64,000 bases of DNA from Octopus bimaculoides (lineage: Eukaryota). Location of the stretch: assembly GCF_001194135.2 (NCBI RefSeq), contig NC_068988.1, positions 59,448,737-59,512,736 on the forward strand, written 5' to 3'. The translations under genes and the position numbers were made by a program. Of the stretch, positions 50,517 through 55,375 are shown piece by piece. Every line of letters starts with the position of its first letter. Within the stretch, counting starts at the first letter, position 1. A model generated the notes under the pieces. That model was given only the letters and a program-made list of their open reading frames with translations. It searched no databases and was not told where the DNA came from.

Positions 50517-50723
50517 TCACAATTTAGGTTAGTTGAAATGTTTGTCACATATTTCAACCGCTAAAGGCAAATACACTGCAGTTACCGTGGAGAAAAAATA
50601 CTCTCTTTATGGTAAAAACGTGTGAAAACATCCCGTTCGTTCAATGTCGCCCTCTCTCAGAAATCCGAGATATCGATGTTTCGAGTTTGTCTTGACTCTT
50701 GTCGATCAGATGTACCTGAGAGG
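50517..50723 (+). repeat. Left arm of ~207-bp inverted repeat flanking the LINE
   Basis: tcacaatttaggttagttgaaa..ctaaaggcaaatacactgcagttaccgtggagaaa..ttgactcttgtcgatcagatgtacctgagagg is the reverse complement of 55169-55375 (roughly 85-90% identical by eye). Confidence 0.95.
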
Positions 50724-50801
50724 GGTAACTCTGAACGAACTGGGAAAGCCTATAGCATTATATATAACGCTGTAAATATATATAAATATTATATATACGA
50801 T

Positions 50802-51008
50802 ATGGAGGAAGTGATGGGGATACTGCAAATGAAGGAGAGGGTCACTGCGAACTGGAGAAGACAGACCCTCAAGAATCTGCGCTATAGAGTCTTTATAGGG
50901 GAGTGGCTAAACGTCAGAGTCGCAGTCGATGGACGTAGGCCTCGATGCTTCGAGTGTAGCGAAAAGGGCCACGTCCGCTCAGCCAGCGAGAAAAAGAAAC
51001 AAAAATAA
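50802..51008 (+). pseudogene. LINE ORF1 (gag-like) fragment with CCHC zinc knuckle
   Basis: VRVAVDGRRPRCFECSEKGHVRSASEKKK: CX2CX4HX4C knuckle with the last Cys changed to Ser (50946-50987), followed by a Lys/Glu-rich region. Confidence 0.75.
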
Positions 51009-51639
51009 GTGAAGCCCCACTTCAAAAAGAAAACACTAAAGAAAGCACTAACGAACACCAAGAAAAGGAAGAGAAAGAAAAAAGGACAGAAGAAGTAGAA
51101 GAAAAGAAGAAAAAAGGGAAACATAAATCCCAAGAGAAAAAAATCAGAAGACACAACTCTTGTGGTGGAAACGGAGATGGATTTTACCACGGTCGTATCA
51201 CACAAGAGAAAAAAGCCCAAGCCCCAGACTCCCCTCCCCAAACAATGAAAGCAAGCAAGTACAATACAGACACACAGGAAAACATCCCCCACACCACTTC
51301 CGTGTTAAAATCCTTTGCCATTTCCCCCACAAAAAGACAAGAAAAATAATTTTTTTTCACGAAAAAAAAAACACTGTGTTAACAACAATAATTCAAATGC
51401 AACACAAGGTGCATGTATATAAAACAGAAAAATAGATGCCATCTTGCATCCCTGTTGCGAGAATGGATGTGTGGTTGTTCCAGGAATTGACTGAGAGAGA
51501 GAGATACCCAGATGACATTCGTGATGTAAGCCAGGAGATAGCTGGCAAAAAGTTTATAGTTAGCCAAGCGGCTATACCGCAGAGAAAAAAAAAGGGTGGG
51601 GAGGACGCCGAATTCATGCAGCCCCTCCCCAAACTTAAA

Positions 51640-54600
51640 ATGTAACTAACTTTTTACCGTCGAGGTTAAGTTATGGTATATAAATGCTCATGGCCTGCGG
51701 TCGAAATGGAAGCAAACTTGTCTTCTGAACGACCTTAGGTCACTAGATATTGAGGTTTGTGTTGTGACTGAGTCCAAGCTGAACAGGCCACAAGCGGTCT
51801 CGCCTCTTCTAAATGGCTACAAGAAATTTATTTCTCCTAGTCGGCGGGGAGGCGAGGTGTAGTGGTCTTGTTCAGGAAAAACCTGTATATACAGGTAAGT
51901 ACAGACTTTCTGCACCCAGAAGGTAGGCTGGTCGTTTTGGATGTGACACACGTAAGTAAACAGTCCTTCAGGTTGGTAGCTGTCTACGCTTCTAGTGAGT
52001 GTAGACAAGCTGGGGTTTTTTTCCGGACCTGGAGAACTTCTTAGTGATGTCAAAAACTCTAGTTTTACTAGGAGAATTTAGCACTACTCTTGACGCACAG
52101 GCGGATAGTGTTGGCTCGACTGATAGAAGGGAAAACTCTGGCCTCAAAAGGCTACTAGGAAGCTATAACATAGTAAACTGATATAGACTGGATGAACCAC
52201 TCGTTCCACAGTGGACGTGGACTAATAACGACGGTTCACACAGATTTTATTTAGATAGGATATTCGTTAGGAATACGTTCAGTTGACCACTTTTTTGTTG
52301 AGTCCCTGACACGCATCACAAGTTTGTGACGTGTGAGGTGTACTTGGATAAGTGTCATAGGCAGGGACCTGTTTTATGGAAGATGAACAAGTCAATTTTG
52401 ACTTGTAAAGCATTCTGTGCCCGGGTTGAGGAGTTAGTGCAGAGGGTATTATGCGGCGTCGTCATTAATAATAAGTGGTGGTGCGCCCTCAAAAGAGCCA
52501 TTCATTCTGAGTCTATTAGATTTAATAATCAACTAAGTTGAACCTAATTAAGGAATCAGATGAGGCCATAGAATCTGGCTCTGCATCCAGAGTGAGGGCG
52601 GCGAAGGCGGTTTCGTCCCATCATCTCAAAACCAAACACGAAGGGTGTAGAGTCAGAGCTAAGTTACGTGCGGTGGGGAGAGAGGGTATTAAGGTTGCCC
52701 GATGGGCACGTCGTGTGGAGAGTCGGAGAGACAGAGAAGCGTCCATAAAGTCTTTAACAAACGAACATGGGCGTACGATTGAAGGACAGTAGGAGATGCA
52801 TAAGGCTTTTCACCAGCATTTTGCCCGGTTGTTCTGGGAGAACGACGCGCTGGACAGTGGGGAGTCCTTACCGGTGGGCAACTACTCTCGGCACGGGAAG
52901 CGGAATGCTGTTAACGGCCGATTACAGCTGCAGAGATTGAAGAGGTCCTGGATGAGTGCGCCGGATACAAGTCGCCGGCGTTGGATAGTCTGCCCTATGA
53001 ATGTTATCGTTGTATACCAGATTTGCTCGAACACTTGCTGGCCTGCGTCTGCACAAGGTGGCAGCAGAATGGGAGGATTCCCAGCTCTGTGAGGCAGAGA
53101 ATGGTGACGTTGATCAGAAAAGACCCGAACAAAGGGGATCTTATTAGTAATTGTACGCCTATAACCCCAATTACTGTATAATTAAAGATTTTGGCCAAGG
53201 TGCTAGCAAAGTGGTTGGCGTGTGTCGCAGAGAAACTTAGAGGTAGGGCACAGACATGCGCCATCCCTGGCAGGTCAATCGAGGACAATCTTCATCTCTT
53301 ATGCTACATCTTAGACACGGTAGCTAAATTATCCGGTAAAGGTTGGGCACTGGTCCATTTAGACCAAAGTAACGCTTTTGATAGGGTAGACCACCAGTAT
53401 CTGGCGGCGGTTCTCGAGGCGGCTGGGCTCGGCAGTTGGATCACTGCTATTTATGGCGGCGTCAATTCCACATTCCAGATAAGCGGTTACCTGTCGGTGC
53501 GGTTTGAGATCAAGCGCTCTGTTCGACAAGAGTGTTCCCTGTCTCTGCTTCTGTATGAACTGTCTCTTGAGCCATTGGTGCGGAAGTTGGAGAGTTGTGA
53601 GGTGGGGATGGGGGACATCCCCAATAAAACCTGATGAGGCCAACATCACCGTGTCCAATGAATCTCAGCTATCTTGTGTATCAAAAGATACGAGGCGGTG
53701 ACAGGTACAAAAGTTAACAAAGACAAGTCCATCGGCTTGCGGTTCTGCACCTGGTGCAGCAACACGATAACGTCCAGTATCGTGGGGCACTGGACAGATG
53801 TTAAGGTGCTTGGAGTCTGGTTCGGAACAGATTCCCAGACGGAGAAGAATTGGAGTGAGGTGGCAGGCAGAGTGGAGGCCCTAATTTGGAACTAGACAGG
53901 AAGGGCGCTATCACCGAAAGAGAATGCAGAGGTGGTGCAGGTGTTTATTGCATCTGTTATCACCTACCCTCAGACCATTGTCCCTAGCCCTGATTCGTGT
54001 GTAAGCAATTTGGCACGCCTTCTCTTCCGCTCCTTGCGGAAGGGAGGAAAGTCGGTTATGAGGCGCTCTGAATGCTGCCAAGAACCGCTCAAGGGTGGGT
54101 TAGGGATGACGGGGCTAATGATGTGCAGGCTTGCATTGAGACTGAGGCATCTCTCCCTCTACCTGGATGGTAGCCAGGTGTGGAATTCGCTAGCAGAAGA
54201 ATTCGCTAGCAGAGGAATTCGCTAGCAGAGGAATTCTTTCCACGACCGACCTCCTTCGAGGAATTTAAACCCGATTTTATTTAAAGGCGTTATACGACTG
54301 AATGGCAAAACGATTGCCGACAGGCACTCGCGCTAATCCATAAGGCGGGCAAAGCCAGCAGCGGGAATACCACCCCGGTATTTTATAAAGGGCTGGTAGA
54401 GCTTAAGAGTGGTGATGTCCTAGGAGGAGCGTTGGGGCTCGTTGAAAACCAGCTAGCCAACCTGTTCCAGAGAACTCTCAGGCCGGGGTACTTGAATAAC
54501 TACCAAAAATCCCTGTTCTGACAGTGCTAAAGGAACGCGTTACCTGTTCACGAAAGAATATCCAGGCATGGAATATCAGTGCTACCGGCAGGCCCAAGTT

Positions 54601-54964
54601 GTGGGCAGGACGATGAAACCGCCATACACGCTCTTGTACAGTGGCCGGAGGCTTCGGTTTGCCAATTTACGTAGAACATGTGTTGTCGCATCTAGGAAGA
54701 GTACAGCTATCAGCTAAATCTATGATAAAGATTGTACCACCAATCGGACCATCAAAGGAAGGTGATGCATGCTCTTCGTGTACAGACGCATCGTTGAAAG
54801 AATGTGTAGGGAGAACTAGAATGAAAGAAGTCACGACAGGAAATTTTATCTCCGGCCTTGGGTTTCTGTATTCAGATACCATCTGAAGACATCTGTCGCG
54901 AAGTATATTCGAGAAAAGATGGAAGGATAATGCAAGGAAACTGGGCATGATTGACCTTACTTAA
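51640..54964 (+). pseudogene. LINE ORF2 (AP endonuclease + reverse transcriptase + Zn finger), many stops and frameshifts
   Basis: APE: YINAHGLRS, VVTESKL, LVAVYAS, LLGEFS, QWTWTN..LDRIF. RT: SPALDSLPYECY, LKILAKVLA, QTCAIPGRSIEDNL, HLDQSNAFDRVDH, SVRQECSLS, YEAVTGTKVNKDKS, VKVLGVWFG. C-terminus: RNALPVHER..GPSCGQDDETAIHALVQW; ends FEKRWKDNARKLGMIDLT* at 54964. Confidence 0.92.
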
Positions 54965-55168
54965 TCTCATTCATGGTAAAAGCAAGGTGTAGCCACTGGA
55001 CTTCACGGTTATGATTTATTTGAAAAAGGTAATTTTTTTTCTAAATATTATATGCATTATCCGACTTGTAAGAAACATTATAATATGAACTCAAAATCAC
55101 ACGATTGTTTGTAATGTCCTGTATTGTCCTTTTCTATGTAAGATATCAATTATCATAATAAGGAATCA

Positions 55169-55375
55169 CCTCTCAGGTACATCTGATCGACAAGAGTCAA
55201 CAAACTCGAAAATATCGATGCCTCAGATTTCCGAGTGAGGGCAACACTGAACGAATGGAGTGTTTTCACATCTTTTTACCATACGTGAGAATTATTTCTC
55301 CACGGTAACTGCAGTGTATTTGCCTTTAGCAGTTGAAATATGTGACAAACATATTTCAACTAACCTAAATTGTGA
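55169..55375 (-). repeat. Right arm of ~207-bp inverted repeat flanking the LINE
   Basis: cctctcaggtacatctgatcgacaagagtcaa...cacggtaactgcagtgtatttgcctttagc..aacctaaattgtga; reverse complement of 50517-50723. Confidence 0.95.

What the first reader, a model, noticed from the sequence alone, without database searches (positions are those of the whole stretch)
50517..55375. Tx1-clade LINE enclosed by ~207-bp terminal inverted repeats with TA microsatellite outside both arms
Seen: a ~4.4-kb ORF1/APE/RT/Zn-finger retrotransposon is bracketed directly by two long inverted arms (50517-50723, 55169-55375, ~85-90% identical by eye). (TA)n abuts the left arm and lies ~40 bp beyond the right arm, and no poly(A) tail is evident. 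Established: non-LTR elements normally have no terminal inverted repeats. Xenopus Tx1L inserts site-specifically into the TIR-bearing DNA transposon Tx1D, and several Tx1-clade families target microsatellites or repeats. Inference, three models: (a) a composite element in which a foldback/MITE carries a targeted LINE and could move it as DNA; (b) a LINE lineage with a built-in ITR architecture; (c) the 207 bp is the LINE 3' UTR and a second, severely truncated copy sits head-to-head at the same TA tract. Models (a) and (b) would be a notable, apparently undescribed cephalopod system.
Basis: partly seen in the sequence, partly recalled or inferred. Interest (0 to 1): 0.82.

Follow-up and report, generated by a model that had tools for sequence, protein, structure and literature searches.

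The report
Dead LINE with inverted end copy
A decayed, 5'-truncated L1/Tx1-type retrotransposon in an octopod-like genome lies in a TA microsatellite next to an inverted 207-bp copy of the sequence at its 3' end, and this looks like two ordinary insertions at one hot spot, not a new kind of mobile element.

Summary
Arms 50517-50723 and 55169-55375 are inverted copies, 88.6% identical, and occur only here in the window. (TA)n abuts the left arm. TA repeats resume 34 bp beyond the right arm, next to an assembly gap. There is no poly(A).

The LINE between the arms is dead. It has at least 6 frameshifts, no ORF above 150 aa, and lacks 100-200 aa of ORF1 plus the 5' UTR. Its closest relatives (52-54% aa, Argonauta hians and metagenome contigs) have no flanking inverted repeats and end in AT-rich microsatellite tails.

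Best reading (about 0.58): two opposite-orientation retrotransposition events in one TA tract, with the arm acting as a 3'-terminal module (13-bp hairpin plus TA tail). Supporting hints:
- Each unit sits in TA-rich DNA.
- A 22-nt snap-back-like fragment lies at the left arm's inner end (p about 0.006).
- A weak TSD flanks LINE plus right arm.

Main rival (about 0.25): the LINE is nested in a 0.5-kb long-TIR foldback/MITE, as Tx1L is in Tx1D. A tail-like motif ends at the arm boundary, but profile tests do not support it.

A built-in ITR is not supported. No other arm copy could be retrieved, so the genome-wide count remains the decisive test. Either reading is a known kind of event. Interest is low.

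The parts
50382..50516 (.). (TA)n microsatellite with CA/TACA interruptions, directly abutting the outer end of the left arm. Proposed TPRT priming site or tail for the left unit.
   Evidence: TRF: period 2, 67.5 copies, 92% matches; sequence.
50517..50723 (-). Left arm (X_L): inverted copy of the 207-bp module. Its hairpin is weakened by a 2-nt deletion.
   Evidence: 88.6% identical to the reverse complement of 55169-55375; nhmmer E=2.8e-74.
50724..50745 (+). 22-nt fragment matching the SENSE strand of the module (positions about 72-93), starting at the first base after the left arm. The junction lies in the microhomology TGAGAGG/TGAGGG. Read as snap-back self-priming of the antisense cDNA end (inference).
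   Evidence: Local alignment score 23. Shuffle p=0.002-0.006. Random window 34-mers give p=0.006 in sense and 0.014 in any orientation. nhmmer E=0.026.
50746..50801 (.). Spacer: 11 bp unique, then degenerate TA-rich DNA (50757-50798). Read as a remnant of the TA tract between the two units. It contains the candidate TSD ATTATATATAC (50788-50798).
   Evidence: Sequence; TRF rows at 50773-50797. The match to ATTATAC at 55375-55381 was read directly and is weak.
50802..54962 (+). Coding part of the 5'-truncated, decayed L1/Tx1-type LINE:
- ORF1 remnant with CCHC knuckle (50862-51008)
- Lys/Glu-rich low-complexity stretch (about 51010-51600)
- APE (51680-52538)
- RT (about 52897-54201; Pfam RVT_1 at about 53152-53596)
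- C-terminal zinc-binding region (54237-54934)
- stop codon at about 54960-54962
   Evidence: Pfam RVT_1 E=3e-12. tblastn with Argonauta ORF1/ORF2 shows six frame changes. ORF1 homology starts at aa 104/232 or aa 216/476 of relatives. Best relatives are 52-54% identical.
54963..55168 (+). AT-rich 3' UTR segment upstream of the right arm. It ends in GATA-TCAAT-TATC (a small hairpin) plus ATAATAAGGAATCA, which resembles the relatives' 3' terminus GGCC-CTTGT-GGCY plus AATAAAGAAATC. This may be the ancestral LINE terminus.
   Evidence: The 13-mer TAATAAAGAAATC (edit distance up to 2) has 18 sites in both strands of the window, and one ends at 55167. nhmmer of the relatives' UTRs and a covariance model of the tail do not detect it, and alignment z-scores are at most 1.
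55169..55375 (+). Right arm (X_R): the 207-bp module in the same sense as the LINE. A 13-bp stem with 5-nt loop lies at 55331-55361, followed by 14 nt to the end of the module.
   Evidence: The RNA fold gives -56.3 kcal/mol, z=-3.5 against shuffles.
55376..55623 (.). Right flank: TTATAC (candidate TSD), about 30 bp unique, a short TA run, a 175-N assembly gap (55418-55592), then (TA)15.
   Evidence: Sequence; N runs; TRF.

Best explanation
The locus is the product of two separate target-primed reverse transcription (TPRT) events, in opposite orientations, in one TA microsatellite.

- Event 1 placed a 5'-truncated L1/Tx1-type LINE on the + strand. Its transcript ended in the 207-bp module (terminal hairpin, then a short single-stranded end, then a TA tail).
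- Event 2 placed a copy of the module alone on the - strand. It was primed from the TA tract at 50516. When the cDNA reached module position 1, it folded back on itself and copied about 22 nt.

A TA tract reads the same on both strands, so it can prime either orientation, and head-to-head pairs are expected there.

What is shown: the arms, the truncation and decay of the LINE, the TA context, and the absence of inverted repeats around relatives. What is inferred: the TPRT origin of both units, the snap-back, and the TSD.

What is unresolved: whether the module is this LINE family's own 3' end, or a separate short partner RNA joined to the LINE by template jumping. A separate RNA would explain why the LINE's relative-like terminus sits exactly at the arm boundary.
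For: - The arms are real and the LINE is dead and 5'-truncated.
- Relatives end in a conserved tail followed by AT-rich microsatellites: (TATC)n in L002, (ATT)n in L004, and a TTTA-like tail in L001, whose 5' flank is (TA)n(TTTA)n. A TA tail on the arm therefore fits this group.
- The left arm's outer end touches (TA)67. TA-rich DNA at 50757-50798 separates the left unit from the LINE, so each unit is embedded in TA-rich sequence.
- The arm folds into a stable 13-bp terminal stem-loop, z=-3.5. Such stem-loops occur at the 3' ends of some LINEs and SINEs, where the reverse transcriptase recognises them (my own knowledge, not checked here).
- The 22 nt after the left arm's inner end match the module's sense strand, start at the junction, and lie in microhomology. 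They are closer to the left arm's own version of the sequence.
- A candidate TSD, ATTATA(TATA)C, flanks LINE plus right arm as one unit (weak).
- Related LINE copies have no flanking inverted repeats.
Against: - No second copy of the arm or of this LINE family could be retrieved. It is therefore not shown that the arm is the 3' end of other copies.
- TAATAAGGAATC, resembling the relatives' terminus, ends at 55167, exactly at the arm boundary. The 3' UTR up to that point (206 bp) is closer to the relatives' 260-275 bp than the 413 bp implied if the arm is included. This favours the arm being a separate unit.
- The right arm is followed by only TTATA and then about 30 bp of non-repeat sequence before TA repeats resume.
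- The 11 bp after the snap-back fragment are unexplained.
- The snap-back and TSD signals are each only p about 0.01.
- Long-TIR foldback elements do exist in this genome (24194-24985).
Confidence: 0.58

Rival explanations
1. Nested insertion. The two arms are the long terminal inverted repeats of a foldback/MITE-like DNA element of about 0.5 kb (207 + about 75 + 207 bp) that itself sits in a TA tract. A 5'-truncated LINE then inserted into the element's TA-rich spacer, flush with the right arm. If this LINE family does so habitually, it would be a cephalopod counterpart of Tx1L in Tx1D.
For: - One event gives both arms, and both arms share the same inner boundary.
- A motif resembling the relatives' LINE terminus ends at 55167, next to the arm, with a small hairpin before it.
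- The 3' UTR length up to that point is similar to that of relatives.
- Another long-TIR foldback lies in the same window: 300-bp arms, 87% identical, at 24194-24493 and 24687-24985.
- Tx1-clade families are known to target piggyBac, Mariner and Harbinger elements (PMC4494074).
- In Argonauta locus L002, two LINE copies only 67-70% identical share a 98.9% identical 3' flank. This could reflect target specificity.
Against: - The terminus motif is not detected by nhmmer or by the covariance model, and it lacks the most conserved core, TGTGG.
- All 16 aligned tails (LINE relatives, L001 SINE-like copies and one window SINE copy) continue past the conserved motif into AT-rich sequence or a microsatellite, but nothing separates 55168 from the arm.
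- No TSD flanks the LINE alone.
- This model does not explain the snap-back-like fragment.
- The arm's outer ends give no clean TSD.
- No empty copy has been seen.
Confidence: 0.25
2. Built-in ITR architecture. The LINE lineage carries inverted terminal repeats as part of the element, or the foldback carries the LINE and moves it as DNA.
For: Only the geometry at this one locus.
Against: - The LINE is 5'-truncated by several hundred bp, yet the left arm lies 75 bp from its broken end.
- The LINE is non-functional.
- Related copies with long open ORF1/ORF2 reading frames in L001, L002 and L006-L008 have no flanking inverted repeats of 40 bp or more.
- The arms are 11% diverged.
Confidence: 0.03
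3. The inverted copy arose by DNA-level rearrangement or assembly error. Examples are fold-back replication, inverted duplication during repair at the TA tract, or mis-scaffolding next to the 175-N gap.
For: - An assembly gap lies 43 bp from the right arm, and the window has 10 gaps, at least five of which visibly sit in microsatellites.
- The snap-back-like fragment could also come from fold-back DNA synthesis.
Against: - The arms differ at 11% of positions and by several indels, so they are not a recent duplication or a collapsed or duplicated read set.
- Both arms lie inside contiguous sequence joined to unique DNA on both sides.
Confidence: 0.06

Closest known systems
Microsatellite-targeting or microsatellite-tailed Tx1-clade LINEs: Kibi (TC)n, Koshi (TTC)n, and crocodilian Tx1 families in (TTCC)n/(TTTC)n (PMC4494074)
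   Same: An L1-superfamily LINE with APE, RT and a C-terminal zinc-binding region. It has no poly(A), is embedded in a simple repeat, and its relatives end in (TATC)n or (ATT)n.
   Different: The repeat here is (TA)n, which is self-complementary and so allows either orientation. Target preference is not shown, because only one locus was seen. Tx1-clade placement was not tested by phylogeny.
Tx1L inserted in Tx1D (a non-autonomous piggyBac element) in Xenopus, and crocodilian Tx1 families inserted in Mariner or Harbinger elements (PMC4494074)
   Same: A LINE lies between the inverted ends of a short element.
   Different: The arms here touch the LINE's 3' end directly. No TTAA or other clean TSD is present. 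No empty target copy is known. The LINE is truncated. Repeated use of the same site is untested.
SINE/LINE 3'-tail sharing, and template-jump chimeras such as U6-L1 (cited in PMC4494074)
   Same: A short unit carries the same 3' module as a LINE. The junction lies exactly at the module's first base and the LINE's last base, as end-to-end template jumping would give.
   Different: No pol III head was found (Rfam and sequence inspection). A TTTTT run sits inside the module. The module's independent existence is unproven.
L1 twin priming (5' inversion)
   Same: An inverted retrotransposon segment lies next to a sense segment at one target.
   Different: In twin priming the inverted part comes from upstream LINE sequence, and one TSD flanks the whole. 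Here the inverted part duplicates the extreme 3' end, is 11% diverged, and is separated from the LINE by TA-rich DNA.

Membership tests
L1 superfamily / Tx1-clade non-LTR retrotransposon | ORF2 with an N-terminal APE endonuclease, an RT domain and a C-terminal zinc-binding domain | tested here: met
   RVT_1 scores E=3e-12 in the window. The APE and C-terminal regions align to Argonauta ORF2. Relatives carry PF03372, PF00078 and PF13966. Human L1 ORF2p is the best solved match to relative P0008, E=1e-72.
L1 superfamily / Tx1-clade non-LTR retrotransposon | RT phylogeny places it with Tx1 reference elements and not with L1 proper | not tested
   No reference Tx1 sequences were available. RepeatMasker-type 'L1-Tx1' families are reported in octopus (PMC13282606, PMC8967140).
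L1 superfamily / Tx1-clade non-LTR retrotransposon | Preference for a specific target (a repeat, multicopy gene or transposon) in more than 20% of copies (criterion of PMC4494074) | not testable with these tools
   Only one copy of this family was available. Relatives sit in or end with AT-rich microsatellites.
MITE / foldback DNA transposon | Terminal inverted repeats | tested here: met
   207-bp arms, 88.6% identical.
MITE / foldback DNA transposon | A target-site duplication directly outside both arms | tested here: inconclusive
   The flanks are ...TATAT| and |TTATAC. A TA or ATT repeat can be read only by shifting the ends, and this is uninformative inside a TA tract.
MITE / foldback DNA transposon | Many dispersed copies, including copies without the LINE | not testable with these tools
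   No other copy occurs in the window or in nine fetched loci. DNA scans of the metagenome, prokaryote-genome and viral collections found none. The source genome is not in the protein collection.
Tx1L/Tx1D-type composite element | The LINE sits at the same site of the TIR element in several independent copies | not testable with these tools
   The source genome is needed.
LINE with built-in inverted terminal repeats | Full-length and related copies carry the same inverted ends | tested here: not met
   The copy here is 5'-truncated. Relatives have no flanking inverted repeats of 40 bp or more.
Twin-priming 5' inversion | The inverted segment derives from LINE sequence upstream of the sense segment, and one TSD flanks the whole | tested here: not met
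   The inverted segment duplicates the last 207 bp, and TA-rich DNA lies between the two parts.

The most novel reading that the evidence does not exclude
The arm-spacer-arm unit is a foldback MITE that this octopod L1/Tx1-like LINE family targets habitually at the spacer/arm junction. That would be a cephalopod analogue of Tx1L/Tx1D, and the composite might be mobilisable as DNA.
Probability: 0.08. Interest if true: 0.5.

Novelty: new member of a known kind. Interest (0 to 1): 0.18.

Why it matters
The locus matters little on its own. It would illustrate how a self-complementary microsatellite can collect retrotransposon insertions in both orientations and so mimic a TIR-bearing element. That is a useful caution for automated TE annotation, because MITE and TIR finders would call this locus a DNA transposon. 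If genome-wide counts instead showed habitual insertion into a foldback element, it would extend the Tx1-type habit of nesting in a DNA transposon to cephalopods. This would be of moderate interest to TE specialists.

Tried and rejected
1. Searches for other copies of the arm all failed.
- Exact 21-22-mers from the conserved core and terminal block found nothing in JGI metagenome contigs, GTDB genome contigs or IMG/VR.
- An HMMER search of 1.84 billion representative proteins, using the longest arm ORF, returned only chance matches to bacterial repeat proteins.
- Eight window ORFs are not in the protein collection, so the source genome cannot be reached.

2. Searches for closer LINE relatives reached only 52-59% aa identity. 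Their 3' UTRs share no detectable similarity with the arm.

3. I tested whether the LINE's true 3' end is at 55168.
- Local alignments to the relatives' tails score at chance level, z at most 1.
- nhmmer of the relatives' 3' UTRs finds nothing there.
- A covariance model of the tail hairpin plus AATAAAGAAATC does not list it among 19 hits with E up to 10.
- Only a 13-mer edit-distance count supports it. I kept it as a hint.

4. Rfam scans and sequence inspection found no tRNA-, 5S-, 7SL- or snRNA-like head in or next to the arm. The RUF4 hit is below its threshold and is an AT-rich artefact.

5. The right flank (55376-55412) shows no significant similarity to the arm.

6. The supplement of the O. 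vulgaris repeat paper holds no TE library.

7. I ran no further search on other arm frames, because the chance of a hit was very low.
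Full report
**Observation**

The two arms exist as described. 50517-50723 and 55169-55375 are reverse complements, 88.6% identical over 210 aligned columns (blastn E=1e-71). 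Homology ends sharply at TCACAATT on the outside and at CCTGAGAGG/CCTCTCAGG on the inside. No third copy occurs in the 64-kb window, even with a two-sequence profile at maximum sensitivity.

A (TA)n tract with CA interruptions (50382-50516) touches the left arm. Beyond the right arm come 34 bp of mostly non-repeat sequence and a short TA run. Then follow a 175-N assembly gap (55418-55592) and (TA)15. There is no poly(A).

**The LINE**

The sequence between the arms is an L1-superfamily LINE on the + strand. Pfam RVT_1 scores E=3e-12. tblastn with the ORFs of its closest long-ORF relative gives this map:
- CCHC knuckle of ORF1 at 50910-51005
- APE at 51680-52538
- RT and C-terminal region at 52544-54934
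- stop codon near 54960

The copy is dead. ORF2 changes frame at least six times and no ORF exceeds 150 aa.

It is also 5'-truncated. ORF1 homology begins at residue 104 of a 232-aa relative and at residue 216 of a 476-aa relative. At least 100-200 codons of ORF1 and the whole 5' UTR are therefore missing.

The best relatives are only 52-59% identical in protein. They are Argonauta hians, an unannotated NCBI assembly, and JGI/ENA contigs. This points to an octopod-like source. So does a SINE-like repeat family with about a dozen copies in the window, which I recognise from memory as resembling the abundant octopus SINE; that resemblance was not tested. Relative P0008 matches human L1 ORF2p best among solved structures (E=1e-72). 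L1-Tx1 families are already reported in octopus genomes (PMC13282606, PMC8967140). Tx1-clade placement itself was not tested.

**What the relatives show**

I fetched nine related loci.
- None of the related copies with long open reading frames is bracketed by inverted repeats of 40 bp or more. This, together with the truncation of the copy in the window, argues against a built-in ITR architecture.
- The Argonauta and JGI relatives have 3' UTRs of 260-275 bp. These end in a conserved small hairpin plus AATAAAGAAATC, followed by an AT-rich microsatellite. The tail is (TATC)n in L002, (ATT)n in L004 and TTTA-like in L001, whose 5' flank is (TA)n(TTTA)n.
- This LINE group therefore ends in simple-repeat tails, not poly(A). 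Some copies are also flanked by AT-rich simple repeats.
- The arm is not detectable in any relative.

**What the arm looks like**

As RNA in the LINE's sense, the arm is more structured than shuffled controls (z=-3.5). It ends in a 13-bp stem with a 5-nt loop (55331-55361), followed by 14 nt to its end. From my own knowledge, not checked here, such terminal stem-loops occur at the 3' ends of some LINEs and SINEs, where the reverse transcriptase recognises them.

No tRNA-, 5S-, 7SL- or snRNA-like head was found. A TTTTT run inside the arm argues against a pol III transcript.

**Evidence for two retrotransposition events**

- Each unit is separately embedded in TA-rich DNA. The left arm touches (TA)67 on its outer side. 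Degenerate TA-rich sequence (50757-50798) lies between the left unit and the broken 5' end of the LINE.
- The 22 nt immediately after the left arm's inner end (50724-50745) match the sense strand of the module at positions 72-93.
  - The match starts at the first base after the junction and overlaps the microhomology TGAGAGG/TGAGGG.
  - It is closer to the left arm's own version of that segment than to the right arm's.
  - Shuffles give p=0.002-0.006, and random 34-mers from the window give p=0.006.
  - This is what snap-back self-priming of an antisense cDNA would produce at the end of its template. It implies the left arm was made by reverse transcription primed from the TA tract at 50516. 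This step is an inference.
- A short candidate TSD flanks LINE plus right arm as one unit: ATTATATATAC at 50788-50798 and ATTATAC at 55375-55381. It is weak in this AT-rich context.

**Evidence pointing the other way**

- TAATAAGGAATC ends at 55167, one base from the arm boundary. It resembles the relatives' terminus TAATAAAGAAATC. Only 18 sites in both strands of the window come that close to the motif.
- A hairpin with a 4-bp stem and 5-nt loop precedes it, as in relatives. The UTR length up to that point (206 bp) also resembles theirs.
- This suggests the ancestral LINE terminus is at 55168 and that the arm is a separate unit.
- However, the region lacks the most conserved core of the tail (TGTGG), and three tests fail to detect it:
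  - local alignments (z at most 1)
  - nhmmer of the relatives' UTRs
  - a covariance model of the tail
- I therefore treat it as a hint only.

If the hint is real, two readings follow. Under the retro model, the module is a separate short RNA, and reverse transcriptase jumped from its 5' end onto the LINE RNA's 3' end. This would explain both boundary observations. Alternatively, the arms are the TIRs of a foldback element of about 0.5 kb into whose TA-rich spacer the LINE inserted.

Supporting the second reading, the window holds another long-TIR foldback: 300-bp arms, 87% identical, at 24194-24493 and 24687-24985. Tx1-clade families are also known to nest in DNA transposons (PMC4494074).

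Against it:
- All 16 aligned tails (LINE relatives, L001 SINE-like copies and one window SINE copy) continue into AT-rich sequence or a microsatellite, but nothing separates 55168 from the arm.
- No TSD flanks the LINE alone.
- The snap-back-like fragment has no place in that model.

**Limits**

No other copy of the arm or of this LINE family could be retrieved.
- DNA scans of three collections found nothing.
- A protein-level search with the longest arm ORF gave only chance hits.
- Window ORFs are absent from the protein collection.

My ranking of the models rests on internal evidence, each piece at about p=0.01.

**Verdict**

- About 0.25: a dead LINE nested in a foldback/MITE, which is model (a) without any evidence of joint mobility.
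- About 0.06: DNA-level rearrangement or assembly error.
- About 0.03: built-in ITR architecture.

The remaining 0.08 or so is unassigned. Both leading readings are known kinds of events. The locus is mainly a caution that TA-tract insertion hot spots can mimic TIR elements.

Noticed in passing
window 24194-24493 and 24687-24985: A second long inverted pair: 300-bp arms, 87% identical, 193 bp apart. A third partial copy of the left terminus lies at about 24651-24690. It looks like a long-TIR foldback/MITE-type element. It shows no similarity to the arms of the finding in the window self-comparison.
   Followed up: partly
window 962-1066, 2710-2940, 5276-5448, 6369-6477, 23341-23556, 30564-30820, 31284-31774, 35079-35548, 41056-41584: About a dozen copies of a SINE-like repeat. 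The copy at 30564-30820 (- strand) ends in CTCCATGTGGACAATACAGAAAT. This resembles the conserved 3' tail of the Argonauta LINE relatives (GGCCCTTGTGGCTAATAAAGAAATC), and that tail motif also ends 11 short repeats in Argonauta locus L001. The abundant octopod SINE may therefore be mobilised by this LINE group.
   Followed up: partly
L002 12787-12965 and 18896-19074 (Argonauta hians): Two LINE copies that are only 67-70% identical to each other are each followed by (TATC)n and then the same 175-bp sequence at 98.9% identity. Possible causes are target-site specificity, an unusually long target-site duplication, or a local duplication.
   Followed up: partly
L008/L009 (ENA contig ctg14421c): More distant relatives (about 41% aa) with complete ORF1 and ORF2 lie head to tail in an array with a period of about 6.5 kb. 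This is as expected for repeated insertion at one target.
   Followed up: no
window 56054-56525 and 56564-57039: A tandem duplication of about 475 bp at 94% identity lies 0.7 kb downstream of the locus.
   Followed up: no
window 1301-1389 vs 1634-1722; N runs at 1723, 5156, 9510, 17334, 28120, 34856, 43092, 47272, 55418, 62128: The window has ten assembly gaps. At least five visibly sit in TA, CA or TC microsatellites. An 89-bp block that is 100% identical to 1301-1389 ends exactly at a 10-N gap, which may be an assembly artefact. The true length of the TA tract right of the finding is unknown.
   Followed up: no
window 10072-10475 (-) and 57550-58083 (-): Two ORFs with a CxxC...GxxY-type nuclease-like motif. 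The first gives a weak Pfam GIY-YIG match (E=0.006, below the cut-off), which suggests remnants of Penelope-like elements. The second has no Pfam hit.
   Followed up: partly
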